A stretch of 64,000 bases of DNA from Phallusia mammillata (GCA_965637545.1 OZ281499.1:1488001-1552000); one strand, 5' to 3'. Counted from the first letter of the stretch, positions 765-58,889 are shown. Numbers and translations are program-made. The notes: generated by a model from the letters alone, not told the origin.

Positions 765-1085
765 GTTTACAGCATTCACCAAAACAAGTTTGTTTCAACT
801 GTCACGACTATATTGCGTTACTGTGGTGGCGCAATGGTAAACAATACCTTCAAAACCTGTTTGAAACATCCAATATGTAACAGGAGAACGGTATTGTGTT
901 TAGTGACAGCATTGCGACAAATTAGGCTACTTTGAAATAGAGAGTCAAGTCACCGAAAGGGGAATTCACCTTTTAACTCTATTGTGAAATCTCATTCTAA
1001 ACCATGTTTAAAAGGACTGGGACTTATGAAATCAAAGCATCAATTTTGAAAGGGCTTTCTGCGAATAACTCGTGAATTGCCAGTC

Positions 1086-2292: not shown

Positions 2293-3154
2293 TGAAAACA
2301 CGTGTGCATTTCTTCTGTGTTTGTGTTCATCACAGATCGTAAATAAAAATCAAATTTTATAATAAATCTTACGTTGATTTGAAATGTGTTTTGCTCCGAA
2401 CGTGGCATATTTTTTTTATAAACAGAACACAGAATATTCACACCTATTAATAATAGCGTCCAAAGATTTTTTGCGTTACAAGTTGGAGGTATTATGACGT
2501 CACTTTTTTAGGTTATGTGACGTCACAAGTTCGCGTTATTATTGCATCACCTGTTTGGGTTATCGTGGCGTTACATAATTGGATAAATGGAACTTTGCAG
2601 ATAAATTTATAATGTTTGTGAGAGTTCTATTATGGAGGTTCTGACTTCTTCTCTGTGGTTTGTCCGCTCCACTATATATTGTGCTTCCGCAATGTGTTTA
2701 ATAAACGCCCTCAAATAAGTGTTTTTGCTCAAAGTAGGCAATGCAATGGTGAACGAAAGTTTGTCAACAAAACGTGAACATAAATAACTTTATTCTTGCT
2801 TTATATTTTTATATTTTATATAAAAATTGATTGCTCACAACATTCACAAAAACCAGTTTGTTTTCCAACTGTCACGACTATATTGCGTTACTGTGATGGC
2901 GCAACGTCAAACAATACCTTTCAAAACCTGTTTTGGAACATCCAATATGTAACAGGAGAAGAGTAATTTGATGAGTGACAGCATTGTGACAAAGTACTTT
3001 GAAATAGAGAGTCAAGTCACCAGAAGGGGGATTTACCGTTTTAATTGTATTGTGAAATGTTTTTTTCAATCATGTTGAAAAGGACTGCGACTTTTTTAAA
3101 ATCTTCACTTGTATGTTATGAAATTATCTGCGGACAACCTGTGAAGTGCCAGAC

Positions 3155-6243: not shown

Positions 6244-6329
6244 TGACGTAGCGCGTTTAGGTTTATCACGCGAAGGGGAAACGAAAGTCTGCAAACGGGA
6301 CATGCCCCCTTTCAATGATATGGCGCAAT
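6244..6329 (+). promoter_or_regulatory. Candidate inducible enhancer of copy 3: CRE-like TGACGTAG, IRF/ISRE-like GGGGAAACGAAAGT, kB-like GGGACATGCCCC, C/EBP-like TGGCGCAAT
   Basis: Motifs at 6244, 6275, 6297 and 6321. Same order at 54681-54766, 12131-12219, 58717-58802 and, on the - strand, upstream of 45609 and 47887. Function is inferred from motif similarity only. Confidence 0.45.
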
Positions 6330-6413
6330 CTGCTTGTGTATATGAACTGGAAAATTCAATATGAAGTGGATTTGTTTTCGGCTCGCTTCCCAAGAAGACT
6401 TTAACTGACAGAT

Positions 6414-7700
6414 ATGACGTGTAGTATTGATGACGCCGTTGAACAGTTTTGTGACGTAATAACGACAAATGATGAGGTTGTGTCTAAGTTGCGGGATATG
6501 AACAAGTTAGGGGGAGGGTTGGAGGAAAAAATTAGAAAAAGAATTGAAGAAATTGTGCAGGAGATGAAAATAAAACTAACGTTTTCAAAGCTCACTTACA
6601 AATCGCTGGATGTTTCTGGTACGAACGGAAACTTACTAGTTCGACAAATCATCGCTGTTTTTGCAAATAGGGAAATTTACAAACCTGGCATGTGTATCGT
6701 GTTGACGGTGGATAACGAACCGGATGCAGCGATTGTCGTGGTTAAAGAATGTCGACCTGAAACCTTTACAGTGCCGAAGAAAACTGATCATCAAAGAGCA
6801 TTGTGGGACAAACTATTTTCAGATAGCAGGTGTGAGGTTTGGAAAGAAAAAGGAAGAACAGAATATGAACCAAATGACCTTGAAACAAAACGCAGAGATT
6901 TTGCAGAACATTTTTCCATACTTTGGAACTCACTATTCGGTGAAATTGATCCACTTTATCGCCACATTTTCTTTGGCTTGGCAACAGAAATGGCAAAACC
7001 CAAATTGAAGTCTCATGTGGATCACGATGTCTACAAGCATATTCCTACTGCTGCGTGCATCAAAATCGCAATTGAAACCGGACAGACAGGTCGTTTGGAG
7101 AATGTGTTTGGGGCGCGTACAAAGCGAGTCAGACAGCAGGCACAAAGTGAAGTTGGTCAAGATGTAGTTCACGCATCTGAATTAGTTCCAAAGCACGAAC
7201 GGCGGCTTCGTGAAGCAAAAGCCTTGATCAGAATGTGAGTTTACACGTTCAAACTGAGATAGAGAAGTATATCTCTTTCAGATGTGGAATGTTAATTTTG
7301 GCAAAACCACTCAACGTGTTAGTTTATTACGTTCGTTAACAAATCGTTTGTTTTAGAAATTAGTGTGACTATCTTAATAAGTTATGGCGTTCTCAAAACT
7401 TTTTTTACAAACTAGTCTGGCTAATTTTTGCTCATTTTTTTATATCCGGATGTTATCAAAAGTTAAGTGGCAAAATGTGAACGACATTTAGCGGATATTC
7501 GGTTAATTATATGCAAACATGTTGGGTGCAAACAACCAGTAACAAAACAAAACGTACTCAAGCGATGACGATGTCGTTGGTAGTAATGAAACTATTTTAT
7601 GTTTATGTATCTGGGAGACAAAGACGGAGAAAACTTTCCACATGAAGACGTTTCAGCAAAGGTTGAAGAAATAAAGAAGTTTTTCGCCTTAGAAAACTAG
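6414..7700 (+). CDS. MTCSIDD family copy 3; exon 1 intact (6414-7234), exon 2 (7607-7700) preceded by a mutated acceptor
   Basis: 274-aa ORF. The acceptor reads gtttat|gtat instead of gtttag|gtat; the exon 2 frame is still open. Confidence 0.7.
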
Positions 7701-9745: not shown

Positions 9746-10190
9746 AAGTAGAGTTGTAAACGGTCCTGAAATTGGAGCCCGAACCCGAAAGTACAAGTTC
9801 GATGGTGCAAGGGTTTCAAAAACTGCAGTTACAGACTTGTGTGAGAAATATTGTCTTTCAATCAGCCGTGACATTGAACTTTGACGCGCCCAGAAACATT
9901 TATAGATGGACTCACCCACAACATCTAAATAGATTCTGCATCTAAAAAAAGCTCAAACGCTGCTTTGTAATGTTTTCGCGGTATTGGTTGGACGTGCTCC
10001 AGAACGAATTCTTAAAAGGCAAATTGCGGAAGTTAGGGTTTTCGCGAGACGGAAAGGGAAAGTCAGCCAAAGGGGGCGTGACCCTGTATGGCACAATATA
10101 CTGTTGGGCCATGTTCATCTTGACTATGACTTCAAATAAAAAGCCGCATTTGCACCAGATTTGCCGCGAACAGGTCATGAACTGACAATC

Positions 10191-11476
10191 ATGACGTGTA
10201 GCATTGATGACGCTGCCGAGAAGTTTTGTGACGTAATATCGATGAACGATATCGTAATTCCTGAGTTGTGGGATATGGATAAGTTGGGGGGAGCTTTGGA
10301 GGACAAAATTATGGACAGAATTCGAATCCTAAGGGAAAACGAAAGAAACAAATAGCATTTTGCAAGCCAACTTACAAATCGTTCGCGGTTTCTGGTATGA
10401 ACGGAAACTTGCTCGTTCGGCAAATCATTGCTATTTTTAGCGACAAAAAATGTACGAACCTGGCATGTGTATCGTATTGATGGTGGATAACGAACCGGAT
10501 GCAGTGATTGTCGTGTTCAATGAAGGCCGACCTGAAACCTTTACCGCACCGAAGAAAACTGAGCATCAAAGAGCAATGTGGGATAAAATATTTGCAGACA
10601 GCATGTGTGATGTGTGGAGGGAAAAAGGAAAAACAGAATATGAGTCAAACGACCTTGAAACAAGACGCAAAGATTTTGCAGAAACTTTTTCCAAAGATTG
10701 GAACTCTCCATTCGGGGAAATTGACCCACTTTATCGCTACATTTTCTTTGGCTTGGCAACAGAAATGGCAAAACCCAAATTGAAGTCTCATGTGGATCAC
10801 GATACATACAAGCACATTCCTACTGCTGCGTGCATCAAAATCGCAATTGAAGCCGGACAGACAAGTCGTTTGGAGAATGTGTTTGGGGCGCGTACAAAGC
10901 GAGTCAGACAGCAGGCACAAAGTAAAGTTGGTCAAGATGTAGTTCACGCATCTGAATTTATTCTGAATATAGCACAAACGGCGGCTTCGTGAAGCAAAAG
11001 CTTTCATCAGAATGTAAGTTTACCCGTTCGAACTGAGACAGAGAAGTATATATCTTTTAGAGGCTAAATGTAAATTTTGGCAAAACACTTAACGTGTTAG
11101 TTCATTACTTTCGTTAACAAATCGTTAGTTTAGAAATTAGTGTGACTATCTTAATAAGTTATGGCGTCCTCAAAACTTTTTTTTACAAACCAGTCTGGCT
11201 AATTTTTGCTCATTTTTTTATATCCGGACATTATCGAAAGTTAGTGCCAAAATATGAACGCGTTTAGCGGATATTCGGTTAATTATTTACAAACATATTC
11301 GGTGCAAATAACCAGTAACAAAACAAAACGGTTTGAAGCGATAACGATGTCGTTGGTAGTAACCAAATTATTTCATGTTTAGGTTTCTCGGAGACAAAGA
11401 TGGGGAAACCTTTTCACATGAGAACGTTACAGCGAAGGTTGAAGAAGTGAAGCAGTTTTTTGCCTTGGAAAACTAG
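10191..11476 (+). pseudogene. MTCSIDD family copy 5, frameshifted pseudogene
   Basis: 1-nt deletion near 10340 gives TAG at 10353, a second 1-nt deletion lies near 10448, and there is a length change near 10960. ORF split into 10161-10355 and 10450-10992. Exon 2 at 11383-11476. Confidence 0.85.
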
Positions 11477-12303
11477 CGGCAACTTGCCAATGGAATAACA
11501 TCGTATATCGTGTGCGCTTACTTTATGTTTGTGTTTAACATAATACAATTATGTTGCTATATTTCAAAACTAATTTGGTAATAAACGATTATGATCTTTA
11601 TGACATTTAGTTTGATTCTGTTTGAATAAGAACGACTGATGATGCCCTTATCGGTGAAATATATATCGTTAAACAACATTTGTTGACTAATTCTGATTAG
11701 AAAGCACTGTCAAATACTTCGTCAATTATTCTTACATGATCTTTATGACGCTAAGTTAATATTAACTCTTGGTCGATATTTATTATAAAGTGTTGCGGGC
11801 CACCTCAGCAACGTAAATCAAATCGCTTACACATGACGCAACACATTCATCTTTACTCTTTATCTATTACTGAAGCCGTGGCGTAACACCAGAACAAAGG
11901 GCATGGGTGGGAATTTGATCAGTGAAATATCGTTTATCCATAACATATCACGTTGCTGGACGCGTCAGGGACATGTTGGTTGTAAACTTTGTTCACACTA
12001 AGTTAGAAGTTGTTGCAATATTTAATCATTATTGAAGCCGAAAATGGACAAGTAACGCAAACCTAACCAGTGATGATAATTAAGTATTGACCCCCACTGT
12101 GTCAACGTAGAATCCACGCGCGTCCTATTGTGACGTATATCGTGATCAGGTTTAACTCGCATAGGGGAAACAAAAGTGAGCTAACGGGGGATTCTCCTTT
12201 TCGACAGTGTGGCTCAATCTGTTTGTACAAGTAAACCGGGACCTTCAATAAAAAGCACAGTTCGTATCTGGATTACTTCCCAACAAGACGTAAACTGACA
12301 GCC

Positions 12304-27027: not shown

Positions 27028-29677
27028 ACTAAAGTATTTAAATGTAAAATATTTGTAACCATAAGGAGCTTCATGCAAATAGCCAATAATGGCAACCCCA
27101 TAACTTAGGAATTATTTTTTCCCATAGTTTTACTTTAATTTTTGGGTCCAAAACATTCTAATTAGGCGGATAATCACCGATAAGGCGTTGTAATAATATG
27201 TTTCACTTTGAATGAAAAAAACGTGAAACATTTTGGTTCGTTTTGCATTTCTCTTTTCGTAAAGTACATTTCTCAATACTTGTCACACATAGCAATTGCC
27301 AAAATTTTAACTATAAATAAAAATGTTCTTTGTTACAGTAACGTACAAAATTGCTTCGTCACATGAACATGTGTTCACGAGTCCATTGCGCTAAAATTGG
27401 TCCACGGATCACTGGGTCATTTAATATGTCAATCAATCAAACGTGACATATTTAATCTACATGTACTAACAAAAACTTTACCCCTGTACTTAAAAATGTA
27501 GCAGTTTTAACTAACGATTCCATCCGTTCGTAACAAACATTCAATCTTAAGGACAAAAAGGCTTAAATCAGTGTACTTAACATTCATTACGTACTTTTTC
27601 CACCAAGCAACAAGCTGGGAGATTCTATTATTAAGTTTAAAGTACATAAATTATTTTGAATTAAAACTATTAAGGTTTTATCAACGGTTTGGGTGCCGTT
27701 GATAAAATTTTGTTTGTTATGGTAACGTAAAAAATTGCTTTATCATGTGTACATATCCGCGGCTTTATTGCGCTAAAATTGGTCCACATTTTTAACACCG
27801 GGTCATTCAATACGTCAATCAATCAAAAAGATATTTTAAGAAGCTTATTTCTACAGTGCCTGAAAATATCATAGTTGTAACAAATGGTTCAATTCGTGTT
27901 TGACATAAAGGTTCGTTTGATCAACATGTGTCCGTTTTTGTTTCTCGGCTTTGGTAACGGTAGATTAGCTATATGAAGATTGAACGAAAGACAGGTGATT
28001 TATCATTTGGCACAATACGATGTTTTAAACCTGTTTGAAAGTGTGGCACTGACTCGTGACATGGCAGAGGCATCACGACTTTATGAGGTCAGATTTAATC
28101 TAAAGCACAACCGCCAGGTCTTGGTAAATACATGTTATAAGGACGTTGGCTTCGAAGAAGCCCTACCGTTCTGGTGGGCGAAACGTGAGCAAAAATACAA
28201 GTTCTTGATCAAAACAACGAGTATTTTGTTTAGCATTACATCAGTTGAACGACAAATTTGTAAATATGCAACCAAACGCTTGTTAGGTATTTTTTACAAC
28301 AGCTATTGTCATCATCAGTGCAAATGAATATACAAGCTCACTGAATGTTTTGTTTTAACTGAAGTAAAAATCAACACTCAGAAAATGTTTTGTTGTGGTG
28401 TTTCGGCCTAATGTATTGAAATGCCGAGTTGTAATGTAACTAGTATCGTCTGTTTAGCTGTTTAGCATTTGTGGGTCGGAATGGTTTTTACTTCACAGGT
28501 GATGTTCTCAGAGTTTAAGTGTTTGTCTACAAATCACATGAAAATTCCTCCCCTCAATTATTTGAAATTTCTCCCTTGGAAGAATTCCTCCCCGGTTGGG
28601 AACCACTGGCTTAGTTCAGTGGTCGGCAACCACCGGTCCGCGAGAAGTTTAGTATCGGGCCGTATAATTTTCAGGCCAAATGCTTTAAAACATTTTGCAC
28701 ATGTATCCCGGGGATGGTAAACTAATTTAGTCGTTTTTTTATTGCTGAATATTTTTAGTTTTTAGTAGGCAGGTCCGCGATAGACTTTCAGTTTCAAAAA
28801 CTGTCTGCAGTACAAAAAAAGGCTGTCGACCCCTTAGTAGTTCAGGACGGTTACTGTAGAAGTTCCTTGGAAACCCATATATTAGATCACAATATTTGTA
28901 TCCGCGCCTTTTCCTTAACCTTTATCAGAGACTCAATCGCATTGCGTTTGATGCGCGCAACATTTTAATCGTAGATTAACAAGAAAAACGATTAAGTAAA
29001 TATTGACTGAAGAGACACGCGCCTTGCTGGTTCGCGGGCCTTGTTATCGACGAACAAATAGTCTCGACGCAATTTATGGCAGACTCTCGCCTTCACGTTC
29101 ACTGTTCCGTGACGTGGCGCACCCCCGCACCCCCCCAAACCCACAATCGCGACGGCAATCAGGAAAAAGAACGATGATTTTTTTCTTGGCCCGATTTTTC
29201 AGGAAATGAGCGCAGATACTTCGCTATTTGAGTTGGATGGCTTCTCGGGGTGAAATTGCTTCGTTGGGTTCATTTTCGAGGTTTGACCAAACCTTACGTA
29301 GGTTATTATTGTAAACCAGGGTCCGGCAACCTTTGAAGCGACGCGAGCCAATTTACTTGTTATTTCCATGTGGTAATGACTTCGCGTGGCAGCATTTTTT
29401 CTGAGTAATAGTGGTTGGTGCCAACTTATATCAATTTTAAGGAGAGAGAGCAGAGCGTTTAGTGCATGTATACTGGATTTTAAGAGAATGGAATGATCAG
29501 TAACTAAAAACAAGCAGTGTAACATGTTAAATTAGTTCTTCACTATGAACACGCAAATCGGTTGGCGTGCCAACAAAATCTTAAGATCACCTCGCGTGCC
29601 AACCTTGACCCCTGTTGCAAACGCTTTCCAGAGGCACCAGGGTCATGCACGTTCTTTTAGCTGATTGGAGTGTTATT

Positions 29678-29719
29678 GCCCTGATGAAGGCGAGCTGACT
29701 AGGACGTTGAAACGTCGGT
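29678..29719 (+). ncRNA. Minimal type I hammerhead-ribozyme-like motif (duplicate at 36037-36078)
   Basis: gcc-CTGATGA-a-ggcg...cgtt-GAAA-CGTC-ggt: intact core, GUC triplet, 3-bp stem I, weak stem II with two GU pairs. Confidence 0.35.
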
Positions 29720-30882
29720 TAAAACGGTACATTTGTTAGAAGAGTATCATTTAGTTTATACCTATTACCTAATGCCTGGCAGCCGAACTTTACTTTGGTT
29801 TATGCTGTGAAACGCAACGCATTCTCAATACATCAGAATCTTTTATATCGGTCTGTACGTACTGGTAAGGTCGTAAGTAGTTAGACATAAAGTAAAAGGC
29901 TTTTTGGAAAAGCAGTTCATCCTTTTGTTTAAATACTAAAAAGTGTTACACTTTTTTGTTTTACAAGTCAACAAGTGGAAGGAAAGTAAAACATGTAGTG
30001 GCATTAAAAGATGTCGATTTAAATTTGTTCAAAAAGTCAGGACATTGAAATCAGTGCACAATAAGTTATATTGTTTGTGTAGTTTAGAGCGCACTGATTG
30101 GAAAAGAAAGGGATTGATATAATGTACTTATGTCTCGATAAAGTAAAACGTTTATATCGTACATTTACGTTTGTGCTATTTAAGATATTATTGGCTGCTT
30201 TTGCCGTTTAAAAGAAACTCATGTTTTTTAACCTTAACACTAGACGGGCAAACCGTGCTTCCAAAACAACCGTCTTCTGATTGGTCTGTGCACATTTTTT
30301 ACACTTATTAGTTTTTTTGCATTTCTTTGTGTAATTTGATATTGAAATAACGAGATTTCAACATTGCATCGCTATATTACGATAAGTGACTGTTGACATC
30401 GGAGTGATTGATTAAAATGTATCTTTACAAGCATTCCAATGCGACCTGAACAAATTATAATTTCGAAATAAAACCATTTCAATTATCACAAATAGGTTTT
30501 TGCATGTAAATACTTTGCCCAATCATCAAGTCATTATCATACCCATGTGTAATAATAAAGACGGTAAACATGTGCAACGAGTGTGGACCTATTTGCCAAG
30601 CTATTTTCAATGCGATAATTTAATGCTACTCAGTTTTACATTAACTTTTATGTTTTATGCTAATCATAAATGAAACTCATCAGACTAAGGTTTGAAAAGT
30701 TTATTTCCTGAAAAGCAGATTATACTGTTTGCTTAAACTTAATTTTCCAAAAAACAAATACCGGAATTGAACAGACTTCTTTTTATGTTCATCCTTTCTT
30801 TGTGTTTTCTTTAATAAAACTGCAAAATTTTTGTGCAAAGTACATGATATTTTTGGAATTCAACTGTGACTGTGTTAAACAG

Positions 30883-33556
30883 AAATATGCAGCGAGTTTT
30901 TGAAAAGGCAGCTTGACCCATCGAACTGTCTCGGCATCCGAGCATTTGCTGACACTCATGCCTGCAGAGAGTTACTACGAGTAGCCGACAAGTTCACACA
31001 AGCAAACTTTCAAGAGGTAAGTTCGTTGTTGTTTGAAATACATGGACAAGAAACTTTACTGGTGCTATTAAAATGCATTGTAAGTCATATGCTTATAGCA
31101 AAATTCTAATTCAATATCACATTTAGGTACACATTGGATAGTTTAAATACTCTAAGCAAAAAGCAAGATAGCCCTCAGAAGATCAAATATATACTGACTT
31201 CTCTTTTTGCTCAGTGTTTTATATGGTATTGATGGTAATGTTTCATGTTTCTGACTTGAATGTGCAAATAAGTTTAGCTTTTGCATTATGTAGATTTGGG
31301 AAAACATTTCTTTTTACCGCTCTATCTGTTTGTGGTTGCATTTTCACAAAATCATAATAAAAACGATTTTTGTGTGTGTGAAGGTGAAAGAGAATGAAGA
31401 GTTTCGTCTTTTGCCTGTGGAGCAGTTAATAGAAATCATAAGCTCAGATGACCTGAACGTCAGGTCCGAGGAACACGTTTACAAAGCACTTATGACATGG
31501 ACACAACATGATATTGCTGAGAGGAGACCATTGCTACCTAAAGTATGTATTCTGGTTTGTTATGCATTGAACATTCACGGTCACAGTGAGATGTGTCCCT
31601 CAATGAGTCAGTTGTTTAGTATTAACTAGAGATGTACCGCATATTCGGTTTGCCGAATTTATTCGCTTTGTTGTGATTCGGCCGAAACCGAATCTTTTAC
31701 GAACTCAAATTTGAAACATGATACATGTCTTTTCTGCTAAAAAAGGCCCTATACACAATCTTTCATGTTTCAGTGACATAACTACAATCACATCAATTCT
31801 TATTACTATTTTTTAAAACATTTTTCCCACTCAGACAAAAAGTCTGTAATTCATTGGCAGGCTGTCATCCATGGCCGAGGCGACCTAAAACCCCAGAGAA
31901 CTGAAATGATAATAAAACACAACTATTCTGTTGTGTAGCACCACTGTTTCCATGGTCAAAAAACTCCTGTTTTTATGTCAAACGCGTACTGTAAGACTTT
32001 GCATGACATCATCAAACATTCGGTTGAACCCAGTTTTGTAACTTGCGTCAAACTCCAATGTACTGGTCATTCACATACATATCATGTCAAACTAAACAAA
32101 CAACTCCCCTTAGCATTTTGGTGCAAACTAACTTGCTTGTGGTGTCACAGCACATCACACCTAGGTTATATGTTTAAAATGGCCAAACACACTGTTTTTT
32201 ACACCTATGGAGTGTTACTGTGACTTTTAGTACCTTATTAACAAACTGGTGGCTCCCTTTAAGTCCATGCGAATTGTCAGACTTGTAAAAAATATGACTA
32301 ACATGTTGTTACATTATACATTTGTTTTAATAACCCCTTTCAAGCGAGAATATTGGTGTAAAATATAACATTTCATTGTGTATTCAAGATTCTTACTGTA
32401 TGGTAACTTGTTTTTTACACTGCAGAGTGCAGACTATTAAACAATTGTGTACAGTAAAAAAAAACATCTTCAAATAAGGCATGTCACATCTTGCGTATAT
32501 TTGGGCCGTTATTTTCACCATTAAACTTATGAACAGATCCGTATATAGTGTCCAAAGTTCTAATTTTATAATCAAAATATATGACCACATACTTGCTTTA
32601 CAGTTCAGATTATCATGTACAATGCAAATCATATTCTTTCAGGTTTTACAACATGTTCGTCTCCCGTTGCTCACCCCAAAATTTCTGGTCGGGGTTGTAA
32701 GTGTCGATCCTCTCATCCACAATGATGAGCAGTGCAGGGATTTAGTGGATGAGGCGAAGAACTATATGTTGTTGCCACAGGAACGACCTCTAATGCAGGG
32801 TCCAAGGACAAGACCAAGACGACCAATTACAAGAGAAGTCCTTTTTGCAGTTGGTGGTAAGTAAAGTACATTGTATTCAGTGATGGGATTCAGCCGGTTC
32901 GCACAGGTTCTATAGAACCGTCTCACAAAATTTTATGAGATCAGCGAACCGGTTAACATTAATGGTTACTGTCAATGGACTTTTTGTAACAGAGCCAGCT
33001 GAAAAATAAGACTTTTGTGATAGAACAGGCTGACAAAAAATTTGAATCCCACCACTGATTGTGTTGCTTGTTTTCAAGCATGAAACATAGCAAGTTTCTA
33101 AACTTTTTTACTTTCTCCTTTTTGTGTTATAGATGAAATCTTGTTTTTCCTTTTTTGTGTGCCACCAAATTACAAAGAAAACGATTAAAAATTTTAGTTT
33201 GAAGCTTTAATATTGAAAATAAGGCTTAGAAAGCATGTGATCTCTTGAGCTTTCTAAATTAAGAGCCCTTGTTCTTAATACAAGACTAGTATTGTGACAA
33301 ACTACTAGGTTATAGTAAGGTAAACAAGCTCTGTTAAACAAAACGATGAATCATAATTGAATCGTTTGTTTCACACAGGTTGGTGCAGCGGTGACGCGAT
33401 CAGCTCGGTGGAGCGCTACTGCCCAGAGACACGTGACTGGCGCTTGGTGGCGCCGATGAGCAAGCGGAGGTGTGGCGTAGGCGTAGCTGTACTGGACGAC
33501 CTGTTGTATGCAGTGGGTGGACACGATGGAACGTCCTACTTGAACAGTGTGGAAAG
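30883..33556 (+). CDS. KLHL20: Duplicate set of four KLHL20 exons (30883-31016, 31384-31542, 32643-32856, 33379-33556)
   Basis: Same sequence as the first four exons of the 37242-42648 model, offset 6359 bp. Confidence 0.85.
32878..33057. mobile_element. ~180-bp MITE family with CAGTGGTGGGATTCA TIRs (other copies ~16333-16510, 19674-19853, 26293-26471, 39237-39416)
   Basis: Shared internal sequence, terminal inverted repeats and near-matching 8-bp TSDs (attgtatt/attgtgtt; gtaaaacc/ataaaacc). Confidence 0.8.
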
Positions 33557-36500: not shown

Positions 36501-37241
36501 AGTAAAACGTTTATATCGTACATTTACGTTTGTGCTATTTAAGATATTATTGGCTGCTTTTGCCGTTTAAAAGAAACTCATGTTTTTTAACCTTAACACT
36601 AGACGGGCAAACCGTGCTTCCAAAACAACCGTCTTCTGATTGGTCTGTGCACATTTTTTACACTTATTAGTTTTTTTGCATTTCTTTGTGTAATTTGATA
36701 TTGAAATAACGAGATTTCAACATTGCATCGCTATATTACGATAAGTGACTGTTGACATCGGAGTGATTGATTAAAATGTATCTTTACAAGCATTCCAATG
36801 CGACCTGAACAAATTATAATTTCGAAATAAAACCATTTCAATTATCACAAATAGGTTTTTGCATGTAAATACTTTGCCCAATCATCAAGTCATTATCATA
36901 CCCATGTGTAATAATAAAGACGGTAAACATGTGCAACGAGTGTGGACCTATTTGCCAAGCTATTTTCAATGCGATAATTTAATGCTACTCAGTTTTACAT
37001 TAACTTTTATGTTTTATGCTAATCATAAATGAAACTCATCAGACTAAGGTTTGAAAAGTTTATTTCCTGAAAAGCAGATTATACTGTTTGCTTAAACTTA
37101 ATTTTCCAAAAAACAAATACCGGAATTGAACAGACTTCTTTTTATGTTCATCCTTTCTTTGTGTTTTCTTTAATAAAACTGCAAAATTTTTGTGCAAAGT
37201 ACATGATATTTTTGGAATTCAACTGTGACTGTGTTAAACAG

Positions 37242-45609: not shown

Positions 45610-46757
45610 AGCTGTTGGATTTGTCTTGTTTGGAAAAGATCCAGATACGAATGAGATTTCTAAAAACGTTTCCAGTCCACAGACATATATGTAGAAGTAG
45701 ATTGCGCCACATCATTGAAAAGGGGCATCCCCAGTTTGCTGATTTCTGTTTCCCCTAAACCTGGCAAACGTGATCCGGCTACGTCGCGATGAAACGAGCG
45801 TCGCAGTGTCTGCGTTGCAGAGTTTTAAACGAGAATGAGATTGGAGACTGAACCTGAAAGTACAAGCCTGAACCCGGCTCGTTCCCGAATCGTTTTTGAG
45901 AAGCCCGTTAGGCCTGAAAGTTTGATTGACAGGCCTATATACACGGTCGGTCGGGTCTAGCAACGGCTACTTTGCTTGTTAAATTTATTTAAAAAACTGA
46001 CACCGAGTGTAAAACAGGCCCTTTTTTGAAAAAAACTTCAACCCAAACCCGACCGAGTAACAACTCTGTTGCATTGACACAATTCATTTTTTTCGGTCTA
46101 CATTACTGGTAAAGTTCGCGTTATTTGTCTGTTTGTCGGCTTCAAAAGTATAGTTACATGTTGCAACAGGTTCCAGTCTGGGCAAGTTTACAACCAAGAT
46201 GTCTCTGACGCGTCCAGCAATATTTCACACATTAAATCCCCCTCCATGCCTTTTGTTCTAATGTTACACATCGCATTTGATCAATGATTAAATAATGTAT
46301 TGCGCCACGTGAAAGCTTTTAATTTACGTTGTTAAGCTTTCACGTAATACTTCAAAGTAAAACCCACCAAATTGTTAATACTTAACCCAGTGATATTTAA
46401 ACTGTATTTCGCGGCACGCTGATGCGCCCGCAAAGATGTCAAAGCATACAGCGGAATATTCTTTTACCAACTTTTGTGTTGTTGGCCTGCGCATTGAGAA
46501 ATTTTAAACAGAAGTACCAGGTAAATCCAGGTCTTTTGTTTGCGTCTCCTTTGACGTCCAAGCACCATCGAACAAAAAGGGACTTGTAGTAAAAACGTCA
46601 ATCAAAAATGATTGAAAAATTTAAAACCACAAAAGCATTTTTAGCTTGTTGCCAAGTGTGAAAGTCGCAAAGCAATGTAAATAATTTACAAACATTTAGC
46701 GGCGAAAACAAACATTCAATAAGTACACTTAATACATTGTCCACTGACAAGTTGTCG

Positions 46758-47887: not shown

Positions 47888-48910
47888 GTTCTTCAGTTTA
47901 CGTCTTGTTGGGAAGCGATCCAGATGGAACTTCGCTTTTTATTGAAGTTCCCAGGTTAACTTATACAAGCAGATTGAGCCACACTTTCAAAAAGGTGCAT
48001 TCCCCGTTAGGTGACTTTTGTTTCCCCCTCGCGTAATAAACCTGATCGCGATATACGTACGTCACAATGTAACATGCGTAGGTTCTACGTTGACACAGTG
48101 AGATTAATAGTTTTTCATCACTGGTAAAGTTTGCCTTATTTGTCTTTTATCGACTTCAAAGGATACTTACATGTTGCGACAGCTTCCGAGTCTGGACAAG
48201 TTCACAATCAAAATATCCTTGACGCGTCCAGCAACATTTCAACCATCAAATTCCCCATCATGCCCTTTGTTCTCGTGTTACACTTTGGCTTCGATCAATG
48301 ATTAAAGGAATGTATCGCGCCACTTGTAAGCTTTTTGGTTTACGTTGTTGAGCTTTCGCGCAATACTCTAAAGTAAATACCCACCAAATTGTTAATACTT
48401 AACCCAGTGATTCTTCAACTGTATTCTGCGGCACGCTGATGATCCCGCAGAGATGTCAAAGCGTGCAGCGGAATATTCGTTATTTTGTACTGGAAACATT
48501 CTCTTATGTTTTCGGGTTTGATGAACAAATGTGACTTGTATGATAACGTTTTAAAGTTATTTCATACTTATTTGTCATAAAAGCAATTCCATCACACTAA
48601 CGTTGCAAACTAATTTCTTTTGATAACTTTTGTGTCGTTGCCCTGCTCATTGAGAAGTTTTAGACACAAGCACAGAGTAAATACAGGTTTGCATCTCGTT
48701 TGCCGGTCAATCATTATCAAATAAAATGCGACTTGTAGTAAAAACGTCAATCAAAAATAATTGGAAAATGTAAACCACAAAACCATTAGTTTTAAGCTTG
48801 TTGCCAAAACATAAAAGGCGCAAAGCAATGTAAATAATTTACAAACATTTAGCGGCGAAAACAAACATACAATAAGTACACTTAATACATTGTCCACTGA
48901 CAAGTTGTCG

Positions 48911-50015: not shown

Positions 50016-50659
50016 GACTGGCACTTTACGGGTTGTCTGCAGATAATCTTATAACTCGCAAGTGAAGCTTTCGTTTCACAAGTCCCAGTCCTTTTAAACA
50101 TGGTTAAGAATGAGATTTCACAATAGAGTTAAAAAGGTGAATCCCTTTTCTGGCGACTTGACTCTCTCTACTTCAAAGTACTTTGTCACAATGCTGTCAC
50201 TCAATAAATTATTATTCTCCTGTTACATATTGGATATTTCGAACATGTTTTGAAGGCATTGTTTACCATTGCGCCACCAAAGTAACGCAATATAGTCCTG
50301 ACAGTTGGAAAAATAAACTTGTTTTTGTGAATGCTGTGAACAATCAAAGCAAGGATAAAGGGTTTTGCTTTCATCTTTCGTCGAGAAACTTTCGTTCACC
50401 ATTGCATTGTCTATCTTAAACAAAACAAAAAAACAAAAATAAAATTTATTTTAGGGCGTTTATTAAACACATTGTGGAAGCACAATATATTGGAGTGGGC
50501 GAACCACAGTGAATAAGTTGGGACCTCCGTTACAGAACTCTCACGAAAATTTCAAATTTAGTGGAAATCATATACCTAAAAAATATAAACACGGGCTATT
50601 AGGATGGTGTTAATAAGATAGATCTTGACAGGCCCAAAAAATAAAGAGACTAATGGTAC

Positions 50660-51110: not shown

Positions 51111-52099
51111 CCCGTCAATGCACATATATCTTGACACAGAAGATCAGAACACATCATAACATCCTGCAACATTTACCGTCATCCGAATGGGTTTTAAAGT
51201 CGGACAGCTGTCGACGAATCTATCAATTTAAATAGATGATCTTCTGAACTATCCTGCTCATACGAAGAAGAATCCCAGTTTACAGAACTGAAAGTACAAA
51301 ACGTGTAATATCAATTTTCCTTAGCGACTCAACGCACCCAGGAAGATTCTATACTATATGCTGCTATGCTTGCAGTATAAAAGTCATTAGGATAATTTTG
51401 AAGCAGAAAGTATGAAGTAATCCGTCCTGTGATTTCTATATGAGTGTGCCGTGTTCACTTGTCTGCATGGACGCTTCAGGACTGATCCCAGTTATGAAAT
51501 TATGTTTATCTTAATCAAACTGGTGTTGATTATACTTCATGCAACGTAATGAGCATACATATGTTTGTTGACTCGGTGTTGCTAATGTCGTGACATGCCA
51601 CAACGATGTTGGTTGTTGAAATAACCTAGTCGTCTCACGTACTTACAAAAACTTTTGATAACTATTAGCTGGTGATGTTATTACATCATTCCGATGGTAC
51701 AAGGGTTTCCAAAAAAATTCAGTTACAGACCTGTGTGTGAAATATTGTCTTTCAATCAGCCATGACATTGAACTTTGACGCGCCCAGAAACATTTATAGA
51801 TGGACTTCTGTCGTCACACACACAACATCTAAATATATTCTGCATCTAAAAAAAGCTCAAACGCTGCTTTGTGATGTTTTCGCGGTATTGGTTGGACGTG
51901 AACCTAAACGAATGCTTTTAAAGGCAAAATGCGGAAGTTGGGGCTTTTGCGAGACTCAAAGGGAAATTCAGCCAAAGGGGGCGTGACCCTGTAAGACGCA
52001 GTTTACTGCTGGGCTATGTTTATCTGCTGAACTATGACTTTAAATAAGAACCCCGCATTTGCACCAGATTTGCTGCGTAGAAGTTGTGAACTGACAGAA

Positions 52100-53386
52100 A
52101 TGATGTGTGGCAGTGATGACGTTGTCGAGCAGCTCTGTGACGTAATAACGACAAACGATGACGCTGTGCCTGAGTTGTGGGACATGGACAAGTTAGGGGG
52201 AGGGTTGGAGAAAAAAATTAGAAAAAGAATTGAAGAAATTGTGCAGGAGAAGAAAATAAAACTAACGTTTTCCAAGCTCACTTACAAATCGCTGGATGTT
52301 TCTGGTACGAACGGAAACTTACTAGTTCGGCAAATCATCGCTGTTTTTAGCGACAAAAAAAATTACAAACCTGGCATGTGTATCGTGTTGACGGTGGATA
52401 ACGAACCGGATGCAGCGATTGTCGTGGTTAAAGAAGGTCGACTTGAAACCTTTACAGTGCCGAAGAAAACTGATCATCAAAGAGCATTGTGGGACAAACT
52501 ATTTTCAGATAGCAGGTGTGAGGTTTGGAAAGAAAAAGGAAGAACAGAATATGAACCAAACGACCTTGAAACAAAACGCAGAGATTTTGCAGAAAATTTT
52601 TCCATACTTTGGAACTCACTATTCGGGAAGATTGATCCACTTTATCGCCATGTTTTCTATGGTTTGGCATCAGAAATGGCAAAACCCAAGTTGAAGTCTC
52701 ATGTGGATCACGATGTCTACAAGCATAATCCTACTGCTGCGTGCATCAAAATCGCAATTGAAACCGGACAGACAGGTCGTTTGGAGAATGTGTTTGGGGC
52801 GCGTACAAAGCGAGTCAGACAGCAGGCACAAAGTGAAGTTGGTCAAGATGTAGTTCACGCATCTGAATTAGTTCCAAAGCACGAACGGCGGCTTCGTGAA
52901 GCAAAAGCCTTGATCAGAATGTGAGTTTACACGTTCAAACTGAGATAGAGAAGTATATCTCTTTCAGATGTGGAATGTTAATTTTGGCAAAACCACTCAA
53001 CGTGTTAGTTTATTACGTTCGTTAACAAATCGTTTGTTTTAGAAATTAGTGTGACTATCTTAATAAGTCATGGCGTTCTCAAAACTTTTTTTACAAACTA
53101 GTCTGGCTAATTTTTGCTCATTTTTTTATATCCGGATGTTATCAAAAGTTAAGTGGCAAAATGTGAACGACATTTAGCGGATATTCGGTTAATTATATGC
53201 AAACATGTTGGGTGCAAACAACCAGTAACAAAACAAAACGTACTCAAGCGATGACGATGTCGTTGGTAGTAATGAAACTATTTTATGTTTATGTATCTGG
53301 AAGACAAAGACGGAGAAAACTTTCCACATGAAGACGTTTCAGCAAAGGTTGAAGAAATAAAGAAGTTTTTCGCCTTAGAAAACTAG
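52100..53386 (+). CDS. MTCSIDD family copy 11; exon 1 intact (52100-52920), exon 2 (53293-53386) acceptor mutated as in copy 3
   Basis: The start variant MMCGSDD aligns to the family start. The acceptor reads gtttat|gtat. Nearly identical to copy 3 from mid-exon 1 through ~1 kb downstream. Confidence 0.7.
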
Positions 53387-54850
53387 TTTCAACTTTAGAA
53401 AACTAGGACAACACTGTATATAGTGTGCACTTGTTACATGTTTGTGTTTATCACATATATGATTATGATGTTATAATTCAATTTATTTTGTCACACAACC
53501 CGCAAAGTTTCATTTTAAAACAGCACCATTAAGTTATGTTATATGCTAATAGGGCTGTACTAAGCAACATAGTACACCACACCTGTTGAAGGCGTTAACG
53601 CCAAAAGGCCAGACTGTAGCGGCCTCTCTCACTACCGTTGTCGTGTGCTTCCATACTACAGCGAACTGGACAGATTGCCTTCTTTCTCTGACGTCTTATG
53701 CAGCGTATTCTCACATTGTGTTGTCCTATTACGATGCACCTCGAATAAACACCTCGCTACAAGGCGTACCGTGATTGCGATATGATTGTGCCGTGATCGC
53801 TGGTCTGCATTTACGCTTCAGGGTTGGTCCCAGTTATAACTTTAGGTGTATTTAATCCAATAAGCGTGATACAAGTGTCCTGAATATTAACGAATAGCCG
53901 TGTCGCATAAGTTTCTGAAGGAAATTTCGCTGTGTGCTGTATTATTGTAATTGTGATTCAAAGTGTAAACAAATTCGTCCTGGTAATCTCAGATCGGGTT
54001 CTGGGTAAGGCTTTAATAAAACGGGCTGAAATAGACCTGACTCCACACTTAGCTACACCTGTGTCGCAATTTTGTTGAGTTGCGGCTCTAGAACGGGCTT
54101 AATTTGAAGAAAGCAATTGGACCGGGTCAAGTTCGGCTTCGCTTACAGCTCTGTGCGTACTATACATTAAAAACTACGAAGGTCGCCAAAGATGCCAAAT
54201 GAAACTGTAAAAAACAACGAAAAATTCCCACGCTTTGTACAGAAATATAATGTTGGATTCTTACCAAGATTTCGCTCTTGTGAAAAAGTTCATGACGCTC
54301 AGCTAAGTATTAACTATTTGGTCGATATATTTACCATAAAGTATTGTGGGCCACCTCAGCAACGTAAATCGAATCCCTTACATGTGACGTAACACATTCC
54401 TTTTTATTCATTTACCGAAGCCGTGGCGTAACACCAGAACAAAGAGCATCGGTGAGAATTTGATCAGTGAAATCTCGTCTTACGTTCATCCATAACATAC
54501 AACGTTGCTGGACGCGTCAGGGACATGTTGGTTGTAAACATTTTTCACACTAGAATTTGCTGCAATATTTAATCATTATTAAAGCCGATAATGGACAAAT
54601 AACGCAAATCTAACCAGTGATATGAAATTGATAGTAATGACCTTACTGTGTCAACGTAGAACTCAAAACCCCTTGCATTGTGACGTAGCGCGTTTAGGTT
54701 TACCACCCGAAGGGGAAACGAAAGTCTGCAAACGGGGAATGCCCCCTTTCAATGATATGGCGCAATCTGCTTGTATATATGAACTGGAAAATTCAATATG
54801 AAGCGGATTTGTTTTCGAATCGCTTCCCAACAAGACTTCAACTGACAGAT

Positions 54851-56014: not shown

Positions 56015-56785
56015 TAGCAACCTTATATATCGTATGCACTTGTTCTGTATTTGCTTTTACCACTGTATGATTGTTGTATTTTTAAACGTGATTTTATAAT
56101 ACACGATGTATCGATTGTGACGAGATGTACTTCCCGACTCCATGCGCTCTTTAGTGTCATCAGCTCATGATCACCACCTGGAAAGCATTTCCCTAGAAAC
56201 CTAGACCTACCTGGGTCAAGCTCAATCGTCTTCGCACCGGCATTTGCATTTTCGCTCAACTTTGCACAGGTCGACATTGTGCAGAGGAGCAGGCCGCATA
56301 GTAACAATCTGGCCTATTTACCCCCAACCGTATAAGTCTTAAGTAGAGTTGTAAACGGTCCTGAAATTGGAGCCCGAACCCGAAAGTAGAAGTTCGATGG
56401 TGCAGGGATTTCAAAAACTGCAGTTACAGACTTGTGTGAGAAATATTGTCTTTCAATCAGCCGTGACATTGAACTTTGACGCGCCCAGAAACATTTATAG
56501 ATGGACTCACCCACAACATCTAAATAGATTCTGCATCTAAAAAAAGCTCAAACGCTGCTTTGTAATGTTTTCGCGGTATTGGTTGGACGTGCTCCAGAAC
56601 GAATTCTTAAAAGGCAAATTGCGGAAGTTAGGGTTTTCGCGAGACGGAAAGGGAAAGTCAGCCAAAGGGGGCGTGACCCTGTATGGCACAATTTACTGTT
56701 GGGCCGTGTTCATCTTGACTATGACTTCAAATAAAAAGCCGCATTTGCACCAGATTTGCCGCGAACAGGTCATGAACTGACAATC

Positions 56786-58067: not shown

Positions 58068-58889
58068 CGGCAACTTGCCAATGGAATAACATCGTATATC
58101 GTGTGCGCTTACTTTATGTTTGTGTTTAACATAATACAATTATGTTGCTATATTTCAAAACTAATTTGGTAATAAACGATTATGATCTTTATGACATTTA
58201 GTTTGATTCTGTTTGAATAAGAACGACTGATGATGCCGTTATCGGTGAAATATATATCGTTAAACAACATTTGTTGACTAATTCTGATTAGAAAGCACTG
58301 TCAAATACTTCGTCAATTATTCTTACATGATCTTTATGACGCTAAGTTAATATTAACTCTTGGTCGATATTTATTATAAAGTGTTGCGGGCCACCTCAGC
58401 AACGTAAATCAAATCGCTTACACATGACGCAACACATTCATCTTTACTCTTTATCTATTACTGAAGCCGTGGCGTAACACGAGAACAAAGGGCATGGGTG
58501 GGAATTTGATCAGTGAAATATCGTTTATCCATAACATATCACGTTGCTGGACGCGTCAGGGACATGTTGGTTGTAAACTTTCTTCACACTAGAAGTTGTT
58601 GCAATATTTAATCATTATTAAAGCCGAAAATGGACAACTAACGCAAACCTAACCAGTGATGATAATTAAGTATTGACCCCCACTGTGTCAACGTAGAATC
58701 CACGCGCGTCCTGTTGTGACGTATATCGTGATCAGGTTTAACGCGCACAGGGGAAACAAAAGTCAGCTAATGGGGGATTCCTCTTTGCGACAGTGTGACT
58801 CAATCTGCTTGTACAAGTAAACCGGGACCTTCAATAAAAAGCGCAGTTCGTATCTGGATTACTTCACAACAAGACCAAAACTGACAGCC

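What the first reader, a model, noticed from the sequence alone, without database searches (positions are those of the whole stretch)
6244..6329. IRF + NF-kB (+ CRE, C/EBP) like cassette upstream of the family genes
About 85-170 bp upstream of the ATG, copies 3, 6, 8, 9, 12 and 14 carry, in order, TGACGTA, GGGGAAAC(G/A)AAAGT or a variant, a GGGG..CC element (GGGATTCTCC at 12188 fits GGGRNNYYCC exactly; GGGGAATGCCCC at 54734; GGGGGATTCC at 58772) and TGGCGCAAT/TGGCTCAAT/TGACTCA. Otherwise divergent promoter types keep the core: GGGGAATTCACC (959), GGGATTTACC (3028), GGGATTCACC plus GAAACGAAAGC (copy 10), and GGAAAGGGAAAGT (10051). Established: ATF/CRE-IRF-kB is the site order of the mammalian IFN-beta enhanceosome, and GAAACGAAA resembles the OAS-type ISRE. 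Inference: the family is immune-inducible.
Basis: partly seen in the sequence, partly recalled or inferred. Interest (0 to 1): 0.7.

Follow-up and report, generated by a model that had tools for sequence, protein, structure and literature searches.

The report
Shared promoter cassette of sea-squirt gene cluster
A cluster of about 16 copies of an unknown sea-squirt gene shares one short upstream control region whose best-kept boxes resemble binding sites for immune-type gene switches (NF-kB, IRF, C/EBP), but nothing yet shows that these switches bind it or that infection turns the genes on.

Summary
All quoted coordinates check out, 85-170 bp before each ATG.

They are not independent recurrences. 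A profile of the 73-nt core finds only the 16 promoters of this one cluster in the 240-Mb genome, so there was one ancestral promoter, copied by tandem and segmental duplication.

Within type A (4 independent lineages) the 57-bp core is better kept than its flanks:
- It has no indels.
- The distance from GGGGAAAC to TGRCKCAAT is always 46 bp.
- Invariant columns number 31/50 in the boxes against 48/138 elsewhere.

Fit to textbook consensus is uneven. The kB-like box is the best: 4 strict matches with 4 different sequences. The ISRE reading holds in a minority of copies. The CRE is only a half-site, and that word is common across the locus.

Support for the reading:
- The genome encodes a p50-type Rel protein and about 9 IRF loci.
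- A distant paralogue array (25-30% identity) carries perfect kB 11-mers plus full CREs in its spacers.

The genes are transcribed and have two exons. No data bear on induction.

Verdict: a real family-private promoter module. NF-kB-type control is plausible. IRF control and immune inducibility are unproven.

The parts
6244..6250 (+). TGACGTA, a CRE-like half-site (type A promoters only; c8 has CGACGTA)
   Evidence: Its distance to the next box varies from 30 to 35 bp. TGACGT is common in the window, 96 against 32 expected.
6275..6288 (+). GGGGAAACGAAAGT, the IRF-like (GAAA-repeat) box. AGGGGAAAC is invariant in all 8 type-A promoters.
   Evidence: 11 of 14 columns are invariant. It fits the IRF monomer core AANNGAAA in c3 and c12 only.
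6297..6308 (+). GGGACATGCCCC, the kB-like box (GGGG..CC). It has one mismatch to GGGRNNYYCC in this copy and matches strictly in c6, c8, c12 and c14.
   Evidence: It is the only block with significant cross-type similarity (c9 against c1, z=8.3).
6321..6329 (+). TGGCGCAAT, the C/EBP-like box. It always lies 46 bp after the start of GGGGAAAC.
   Evidence: 7 of 9 columns are invariant.
6339..6367 (+). Stretch with TATA-like elements (TATATG; CAATATGAAG, which corresponds to AATAAAAAG of c6, c9 and c14). This is the inferred core promoter.
   Evidence: Inference only; no transcription start was mapped.
6409..6411 (+). CAG 2 nt before the ATG, a probable spliced-leader trans-splice acceptor (inferred)
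   Evidence: An AG lies 2-3 nt before the ATG in every intact cluster copy, while the broken copies c5 and c13 read CAA. In most of the distant paralogues examined the ATG follows TTTGCAG or a close variant. Earlier notes call this a trans-splicing sea squirt.
6414..7234 (+). Exon 1 of copy c3 (274 codons), ending at the donor AT|GTGAGT
7618..7645 (+). Coding part of exon 2 as used in cDNA contigs of the c3/c11 type. The normal acceptor reads AT, and an AG 10 nt further on is used.
   Evidence: The loose letters (runs X1, X3) equal 7618 onward.
12154..12226 (+). Homologous core, copy c6 (type A)
45694..45766 (-). Homologous core, copy c8 (type A). Upstream of the CRE-like box this copy is unrelated to the other type-A copies.
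47965..48037 (-). Homologous core, copy c9 (type A)
54701..54773 (+). Homologous core, copy c12 (type A)
58740..58812 (+). Homologous core, copy c14 (type A)
10041..10113 (+). Type C core, copy c5 (broken gene). GGAAAGGGAAAGT is the best ISRE match. The kB-like box has changed to GGGGGCGTGACCC.
51946..52018 (+). Type C core, copy c11
56636..56708 (+). Type C core, copy c13 (broken gene, yet transcribed and spliced)
924..996 (+). Type B core, copy c1
2993..3065 (+). Type B core, copy c2
50108..50180 (-). Type B core, copy c10

Best explanation
This is the proximal promoter of one tandem cluster of a tunicate-only, fast-evolving, probably intracellular protein family of about 305 residues encoded in two exons. 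All 16 promoters descend from one ancestral promoter.

A 57-bp core is held under constraint on both sequence and spacing. It runs: GAAA-repeat box, 8 bp, GGGG..CC box, 12 bp, TGRCKCAAT box. It lies about 30-60 bp upstream of TATA-like elements. The core most likely works as a docking platform for a Rel/NF-kB p50-type dimer, flanked by a GAAA-reading factor (an IRF is the obvious candidate) and a bZIP factor (C/EBP/ATF type). That would make the genes respond to a signal (immune or stress) rather than being constitutively on.

Shown here: the boxes exist; they are kept better than their flanks; their spacing is fixed; the candidate factors are encoded in the genome; some copies are transcribed and spliced; and a distant paralogue array has perfect kB plus CRE modules.

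Inferred: that any of these factors binds, where transcription starts, and any induction.
For: - Coordinates and order are confirmed.
- Invariant columns number 31/50 in the boxes against 48/138 in the flanks (Fisher p=8e-4).
- Within type A, identity is 0.89 (IRF-like box) and 0.93 (C/EBP-like box) against 0.64 in the flanks. Identity at four-fold sites among the same genes is 0.60-0.76.
- The core has 0 gap columns in 57, against 7/39 and 11/92 in the flanks. The GGGGAAAC-to-TGRCKCAAT distance is always 46 bp, even in c8, where +1 and -1 shifts cancel out.
- The kB-like box matches GGGRNNYYCC strictly in four window copies, with four different sequences.
- The ordered triple of ISRE (up to 1 mismatch), kB (up to 1 mismatch) and C/EBP has a chance rate of about 5e-4 per 150 bp.
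- The only significant similarity between promoter types A and B is the 29-bp block that holds the kB-like box (z=8.3).
- The Rel gene on C3 has the p50-type recognition loop RFRYTCEGPSHGG. There are about 9 IRF loci.
- The distant paralogue array has 9 modules of GGGAATTCCCC(C) followed 54-60 bp later by TGACGTCA in most of them (two read GGCGTCA, one TGACATCA and one has none), in 8 of the 13 loci examined.
- The genes are under purifying selection (median dN/dS 0.33) and are transcribed and spliced.
Against: - All copies are paralogues, so there is only one origin. The boxes were chosen because they were conserved, so the enrichment test is partly circular. A run of 9 invariant columns has p of about 0.07 under a uniform model (my estimate).
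- Only c3, c12, c8/x1 and c1 meet the ordered triple when the consensus motifs are fixed in advance.
- The second GAAA is AAAA in c6, c9, c14 and x2. In c3 and c12 the GAAA units are 1 nt apart, not 2.
- The best ISRE matches sit on the two broken genes.
- Type C has lost the kB-like pattern.
- Between promoter types, box identity is no higher than neutral four-fold-site identity.
- Genome-wide, strict ISRE+kB pairs are barely above the control (20 against 11).
- A Clavelina homologue has kB sites only 2.2-4.5 kb upstream, and contigs from an unnamed source (presumably a tunicate) have none.
- There is no expression data from challenged animals. The cDNA contigs seen come from small SMART-type libraries whose sample type is coded.
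Confidence: 0.4

Rival explanations
1. It is a real, selectively kept promoter module, but it is read by other factors and used for developmental, germline or constitutive expression, not for immune induction. The resemblance to IRF, NF-kB and C/EBP sites is then superficial. Alternatively Rel acts here in a developmental role.
For: - The evidence for constraint is the same as above.
- Each consensus fits only some of the copies.
- The most widely conserved string across all types is AAGTCA(S)C..AA.GGG, which also reads as a Maf or nuclear-receptor-like half-site (the motif assignment is from my own knowledge).
- Type C turns the kB-like box into a GGGGCGTG (Sp/KLF-like) string.
- Transcripts were found in small SMART-type cDNA libraries of 2020. 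One published 2020 data set of the species that earlier notes name consists of early-embryo Smart-seq2 cells (PMC7237864). The runs are coded, and the oligo tail seen (..GTACGGG) is generic SMART, so this link is not shown.
Against: The perfect p50-type kB 11-mers and full CREs in the distant paralogue array are hard to read as anything but Rel and bZIP sites. The Rel protein keeps every base-contacting residue of the recognition loop.
Confidence: 0.33
2. There is no selection on the boxes. The cassette is simply sequence inherited through recent duplication and gene conversion, and the immune-factor names are pattern-matching on a G-rich and A-rich stretch.
For: - The module is private to one cluster.
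- The coding-sequence tree and the promoter types disagree: c3 and c11 are 91% identical in protein but have type A and type C promoters. This shows recombination or conversion.
- Cross-type local alignments are mostly not above shuffled controls.
- Between types, box identity is about equal to four-fold-site identity.
- The broken copies c5 and c13 keep the boxes.
- Windows with at least 8 of 10 invariant columns are expected once or more by chance (my estimate).
Against: - The 57-bp core has no indels, while both flanks do, and c8 shows compensating +1/-1 shifts.
- c8/x1 lost all similarity upstream of the CRE-like box but kept the core.
- The kB-like box stays within consensus through four different sequences. 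My rough estimate is p of about 0.02 for 3 of 4 lineages under neutral drift.
- The c9-c1 block stands out while the rest of those two promoters cannot be aligned, despite dS of 0.43.
Confidence: 0.2

Closest known systems
Mammalian IFN-beta enhanceosome (PRDIV ATF-2/c-Jun, PRDIII-I IRF, PRDII NF-kB)
   Same: The 5'-to-3' order is the same: a bZIP-type site, then a GAAA-repeat site, then a kB-type site, just upstream of a TATA-type core promoter (order known from the literature; motifs).
   Different: - Here the elements spread over about 85 bp with gaps, instead of about 55 bp of abutting sites.
- There are only one or two GAAA units, not four IRF sites.
- The CRE is a half-site at variable distance (30-35 bp) and is absent from types B and C.
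- A fourth, C/EBP-like box follows the kB-like box.
- The downstream gene is a probably intracellular orphan protein without an evident signal peptide, not a cytokine.
- Cooperative assembly and virus induction are untested.
kB + AP-1 + CRE spacer module of the distant paralogue array at C6:4.40-4.57 Mb (earlier scan notes s1-369015, s1-364012)
   Same: Same protein family (25-30% identity, same two-exon structure with the stop codon inside the donor site). A kB-type site sits upstream together with a CRE-type site. In 7 of 9 modules a GAAA-containing stretch ending in GCAA or GAAA lies just 5' of the GGG.
   Different: In that array the kB site is a perfect 11/12-mer palindrome, the CRE is mostly the full TGACGTCA, the order is kB then CRE, and the module lies 655-995 bp before the ATG. 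Here the kB-like box is degenerate, the CRE is a half-site placed 5' of it, and everything lies within 170 bp of the ATG. The profile of this cluster's core matches those modules only through the kB box (E 0.4-2), so common descent of the two modules is not shown.
Vertebrate ISRE of interferon-stimulated genes (GGGAAANNGAAACT)
   Same: GGGGAAAC.. begins like an ISRE. c8 (GGGGAAACAGAAAT) and type C (GGAAAGGGAAAGT) have the 2-nt spacing.
   Different: Most copies have 1-nt spacing or lack the second GAAA. No interferon system is known in tunicates (my own knowledge).

Membership tests
kB site (Rel/NF-kB binding site) | 10-bp GGGRNNYYCC, or the 11-bp p50-type GGGGATTCCCC | tested here: inconclusive
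   Strict matches in c6, c8/x1, c12 and c14. One mismatch in c3, c9/x2 and all type B copies. No match in type C. The box is 12 bp long in most copies and 11 bp in c8.
kB site (Rel/NF-kB binding site) | A cognate Rel protein with conserved DNA-contact residues is encoded in the genome | tested here: met
   Two RHD loci. The C3 gene reads RFRYTCEGPSHGG, a p50-type loop with His.
kB site (Rel/NF-kB binding site) | Bound by Rel dimers, with transcription depending on the site | not testable with these tools
   Needs EMSA, DAP-seq or ChIP, and reporter mutagenesis.
ISRE / IRF-E | Two GAAA units 2 nt apart (GAAANNGAAA), or at least the monomer core AANNGAAA | tested here: not met
   GAAANNGAAA occurs only in c8/x1 and in type C copies c5 and c13. 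AANNGAAA also occurs in c3, c12, c11 and x5. It is absent in c6, c14, c9, x2 and at this position in type B.
ISRE / IRF-E | IRF genes present in the genome | tested here: met
   19 exon-level hits to PF00605, amounting to about 9 loci.
CRE (ATF/CREB site) | Palindrome TGACGTCA, or a conserved half-site TGACG/CGTCA at a fixed position | tested here: inconclusive
   Only TGACGTA is present, in type A; c8 reads CGACGTA. Spacing to the core varies from 30 to 35 bp. TGACGT is three times over-represented across the window.
C/EBP site | TKNNGNAAK (TTGCGCAAT-like) | tested here: inconclusive
   Met in c3, c12, c8/x1 and type B (TTGTGAAAT). Not met in c6, c9, c14, x2 (TGGCTCAAT / TGACTCAAT) or in type C.
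IFN-beta-type enhanceosome | Abutting ATF, multiple IRF and NF-kB sites with helical phasing, cooperative assembly and virus inducibility | tested here: not met
   The order is met in type A. Abutment, the number of IRF sites and fixed CRE spacing are not met. Assembly and induction cannot be tested here.
Immune-inducible gene family | mRNA rises after immune challenge | not testable with these tools
   The only RNA evidence is contigs from coded, small SMART-type libraries covering 57264-57604 and exon 2. No paper mentions the Ciona homologues.

The most novel reading that the evidence does not exclude
An ATF-IRF-NF-kB-C/EBP composite element, laid out like the interferon-beta enhanceosome, operates in an invertebrate chordate that has no known interferon. 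Together with the kB-CRE modules of the sister array, it places an orphan tunicate family with at least 87 matching places in this genome (intracellular, with a fold that matches no solved structure) under Rel/IRF control as an inducible effector arsenal. The enhanceosome-type logic would then predate interferon itself.
Probability: 0.1. Interest if true: 0.75.

Novelty: new member of a known kind. Interest (0 to 1): 0.42.

Why it matters
If the boxes are real Rel, IRF and bZIP sites, this cluster and its roughly 60-copy sister array would mark a large, undescribed tunicate-specific family as a target of NF-kB-type signalling. That would give a compact, 57-bp natural test bed for studying how such signalling is wired in the closest invertebrate relatives of vertebrates. 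The test bed has three promoter variants, one natural deletion (x3) and several natural point variants of each box. If the boxes are not such sites, the finding is an ordinary case of promoter sequence inherited among young paralogues.

Tried and rejected
- Protein identity. Pfam, PDB sequence search, the word-based protein search and the ESM Atlas features gave nothing. An AlphaFold model (pLDDT 65) matched no fold in PDB by Foldseek, in PDB by VIA-align wide (best Z 4.0) or in the Atlas (best TM 0.37). I considered a nucleotidyltransferase-like reading of the N-terminal alpha/beta part but dropped it, because it rested only on noise-level rows.\n- Relatives. The profile search found 49 relatives, all at most 31% identical. 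The ones with names are from Ciona and Clavelina. No close orthologue exists, so the promoters could not be compared across species.\n- Cross-species kB check. Clavelina has kB sites only 2.2-4.5 kb upstream, and the JGI contigs have none.\n- Genome-wide composite patterns. The strict type-A pattern occurs only in this cluster plus one chance hit. GAAANNGAAA followed by a strict kB site gives 20 hits against 11 in the control. GGGGAAAC followed by a strict kB site gives 8 against 14. Neither loose pattern shows genome-wide enrichment. Some hits looked suggestive (near an IRF gene and a BTB gene) but proved nothing.\n- Descent of the two modules. The profile of the core against the distant array matches only through the kB box and is not individually significant. 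I therefore do not claim that the two modules share descent.\n- Proximal region of the distant paralogues (-260 to the ATG): no cassette.\n- Literature. No paper names the Ciona homologues or describes such a cassette in tunicates.\n- RNA. No contig covered any promoter, any 5' end, or copies c12 and c14.

Full report
**What is there.** The window is G000:C6:1488001-1552000 of a 240-Mb animal genome. It holds 13 copies of one gene family:
- Ten intact copies, with ATGs at 1086, 3155, 6414, 12304, 45609(-), 47887(-), 50015(-), 52100, 54851 and 58890.
- Two broken copies, at 10191 and 56786.
- One fragment, at 8795.

Five more copies lie just left of the window (x1-x5). These are a recent segmental duplicate of window 44.8-52.1 kb.

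The nearest named relatives of the protein are uncharacterised proteins of Ciona intestinalis and Clavelina lepadiformis. This agrees with earlier scan notes that call the genome a sea squirt; one note names Phallusia mammillata, which I did not verify. The window contains no N.

**The observation.** By eye and by alignment there are three promoter types:
- Type A: c3, c6, c8, c9, c12, c14, x1, x2.
- Type B: c1, c2, c10, x4.
- Type C: c5, c11, c13, x5.

Type A reads, 5' to 3': (T/C)GACGTA; 30-35 bp; AGGGGAAAC(N)RAART; 8 bp; GGGG..CC (11-12 bp); 12 bp; TGRCKCAAT; TATA-like elements; ATG.

Types B and C keep a recognisable version of the stretch from the 3' end of the GAAA box to the CAAT box. 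They lack the CRE-like site.

**Is it more than chance?** As a string, yes. GGGGAAACNNAART occurs 6 times against 0.02 expected. Four of the six strict GGGRNNYYCC matches in the 64 kb fall at the homologous promoter spot, where 0.05 is expected.

These are not independent events, however. A sequence profile of the 73-nt core (A2, R1) finds exactly the 16 promoters of this cluster in the genome, and the next hit has E=0.58. The strict composite pattern likewise occurs only here, plus one chance hit. The recurrence is therefore descent from one ancestral promoter. The independent type-A lineages number four.

**Is the core kept better than its surroundings?** Within type A, yes, moderately.
- Invariant columns number 31/50 in the four boxes against 48/138 elsewhere between the CRE-like box and the ATG (Fisher p=8e-4).
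- Pairwise identity is 0.89 for the GAAA box and 0.93 for the CAAT box, against 0.64 in the flanks. Four-fold synonymous sites of the same genes are 0.60-0.76 identical.
- The 57 columns from GGGGAAAC to CAATCT contain no gap, while the flanks have 7/39 and 11/92 gap columns.
- The distance from GGGGAAAC to TGRCKCAAT is 46 bp in all eight copies. In c8 a +1 shift and a -1 shift cancel out.
- c8/x1 has lost all similarity upstream of the CRE-like box but keeps the core.

Two cautions apply. The boxes were chosen because they looked conserved. And under a uniform model a run of nine invariant columns has p of only about 0.07 (my estimate).

Between promoter types the evidence is weaker. Box identity (0.42-0.75) is no higher than four-fold-site identity. 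Only one cross-type local alignment beats shuffled controls: c9 (type A) against c1 (type B), z=8.3. That alignment is the 29-bp block containing the kB-like box.

The coding and promoter trees disagree. c3 and c11 are 91% identical in protein but carry type A and type C promoters. Recombination or gene conversion has therefore shuffled these modules.

**Do the boxes fit the named factors?** The fit is uneven.
- *kB.* Strict matches occur in c6 (GGGATTCTCC), c14 (GGGGGATTCC), c12 (reverse strand, GGGGCATTCC) and c8/x1 (GGGATGCCCC). There is one mismatch in c3, c9/x2 and all type B copies, and no match in type C. Four different sequences stay within consensus. By my rough estimate this is unlikely under neutral drift (p about 0.02 for 3 of 4 lineages).
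- *IRF/ISRE.* GAAANNGAAA is met only by c8/x1 and by type C copies c5 and c13, which are the two broken genes. c3 and c12 meet only the monomer core AANNGAAA, with the two GAAA units 1 nt apart. c6, c9, c14 and x2 have AAAA in place of the second GAAA. What is actually invariant is AGGGGAAAC.
- *CRE.* Only a half-site is present, only in type A, and at variable distance. TGACGT is common in this locus (96 against 32 expected), partly because every gene begins ATGACGTGT.
- *C/EBP.* TKNNGNAAK is met in c3, c12, c8/x1 and type B, and not elsewhere.

With the consensus motifs fixed in advance, the ordered triple of ISRE (up to 1 mismatch), kB (up to 1 mismatch) and C/EBP is met by c3, c12, c8/x1 and c1 only. 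Its chance rate is about 5e-4 per 150 bp (0 in 183 kb of real background; 9 in 3 Mb of Markov sequence). That is suggestive for a single ancestral promoter. It is not compelling, given how many motif combinations a reader could have found noteworthy.

**Supporting context.**
- The genome has two Rel-homology loci. The one on C3 encodes RFRYTCEGPSHGG, the p50-type recognition loop with every base-contacting residue. Such a protein would be expected to prefer GGGGA-type half-sites, as in GGGGAATGCCCC or GGGGATGCCCC (established knowledge of p50).
- There are about nine IRF loci.
- Earlier scan notes (s1-369015, s1-364012) reported NF-kB-type palindromes with AP-1 and CRE in the spacers of an orphan gene array about 2.85 Mb further along this contig. 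That array turns out to be the distant branch of the same family: 25-30% identity, and the same structure with the stop codon inside the donor site.
- I tested that claim on the 13 loci I held. Nine modules in eight loci carry GGGAATTCCCC(C), GGGGATTCCCCC or GGGAATCCCCC. In most of them TGACGTCA follows 54-60 bp later (two read GGCGTCA, one TGACATCA and one has none), and the module lies 655-995 bp before the next ATG. The surrounding sequence has largely diverged.
- Two old branches of one family thus each keep a kB-type and a CRE-type site upstream. This is what raised my estimate for the Rel reading.
- I do not claim that the two modules share descent. The core profile matches the distant modules only through the kB box (E 0.4-2).
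- Outside this genome the pattern is not seen in the few homologues I could fetch.

**Gene structure and transcription.**
- cDNA-like contigs cover 57264-57604 and splice 57604 to 57974 (GT..AG). One of them carries a SMART template-switch oligo tail.
- The 'intronless' ORFs are therefore first exons. The donor overlaps the stop codon, and a conserved second exon adds about 30 residues (..LGDKDGENF...KKFFALEN) in most copies.
- In c3 and c11 the normal acceptor reads AT. The contigs of runs X1 and X3 use an AG 10 nt further on, which changes the frame and gives a short tail.
- An AG lies 2-3 nt before every intact ATG. It is lost (CAA) in the two broken copies. In most of the distant paralogues examined it sits in TTTGCAG or a close variant. 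In a trans-splicing sea squirt (not tested here) this is most simply the spliced-leader acceptor. The transcription start is therefore not mapped.
- The TATA-like elements 55-77 bp before the ATG are the only clue that the cassette is proximal.
- No contig covered any promoter or 5' end, and the sample types of the runs are coded. Nothing can be said about induction.
- dN/dS among the copies is 0.19-0.50 (median 0.33). The proteins are functional and evolve fast.
- The protein has no Pfam family and no match to any solved or Atlas structure.

**Verdict.** The thing is a real, family-private proximal promoter module.
- *Best reading (0.40):* a signal-responsive platform centred on a Rel/NF-kB-type site, with flanking GAAA-reading and bZIP-type partners.
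- *Rival 1 (0.33):* the same module read by other factors, or used in development.
- *Rival 2 (0.20):* mere inheritance with chance resemblance.

The order of sites matches the IFN-beta enhanceosome in type A. The defining features of that element (abutting sites, multiple IRF sites, fixed phasing of the ATF site) are not met. 'Immune-inducible' remains an untested inference.

The joined two-exon protein was not assembled or searched. Exon 1 was searched by reference only.

Noticed in passing
G000:C6:1483007 (minus strand; locus L031, copy x3), just left of the window: A copy with an intact 298-codon open frame has lost the whole cassette and the TATA-like elements through a deletion running from just after TTGTGA to ..TTACTTCCC. 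It is a ready-made natural control for promoter function.
   Followed up: partly
window 7600-7645 and 53285-53330 (copies c3 and c11): The exon-2 acceptor AG has become AT. cDNA contigs of runs X1 and X3 join exon 1 to an AG 10 nt further on. This shifts the frame and replaces the conserved 30-residue tail with a 9-residue one.
   Followed up: yes
window 56786-57608 (c13) and 10191-10992 (c5): These two copies are broken by frameshifts and a small internal duplication, and they lack the AG before the ATG. Even so, cDNA contigs from c13, or from c5 which shares its exon 2, are spliced to the exon-2 form of these two copies (57604 to 57974).
   Followed up: partly
window 27980-39223: Three ORF pairs are identical at an offset of exactly 6359 bp (27980/34339, 29199/35558, 32481/38840). 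This points to a perfect tandem duplication, or an assembly artefact, that includes an exon of a kelch-like (BACK domain) gene.
   Followed up: no
G000:C6:4400000-4575000, C1:9442000-9478000, C6:4100224, C6:26411178: These are further arrays and single copies of the same family at 23-31% identity. The protein query gave 87 matches in the genome. The two-exon structure, with the stop codon inside the donor site, is shared.
   Followed up: partly
G000:C1:26200822-26200859 (minus strand; L038): GAAAAGGAAA followed by GGGGGTTCCCC lies about 730 bp upstream of the first DNA-binding exon of an IRF gene. This may be an ISRE + kB pair on an IRF promoter.
   Followed up: no
G000:C7:17667667, 17713052, 17759356; C4:1679131; C4:1748539: Other tight pairs of a strict ISRE core and a perfect kB site (for example GAAACCGAAAC..GGGAATTCCC). 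One lies about 800 bp upstream of a BTB/BACK gene. Three are identical copies spaced 46 kb apart. Genome-wide, the pairs are not clearly enriched over the control.
   Followed up: partly
whole window: TGACGT occurs 96 times against 32 expected. Part of the excess comes from the conserved start ATGACGTGT and from repeated spacer blocks such as CATATGACGTAACAC.
   Followed up: no
window, coding sequences against promoters: Promoter type and coding-sequence relatedness disagree. c3 and c11 are 91% identical in protein but carry type A and type C promoters. c8 and c12 are 84% identical, yet c12's promoter matches c3's. The cluster evolves as a mosaic, through recombination or gene conversion.
   Followed up: partly
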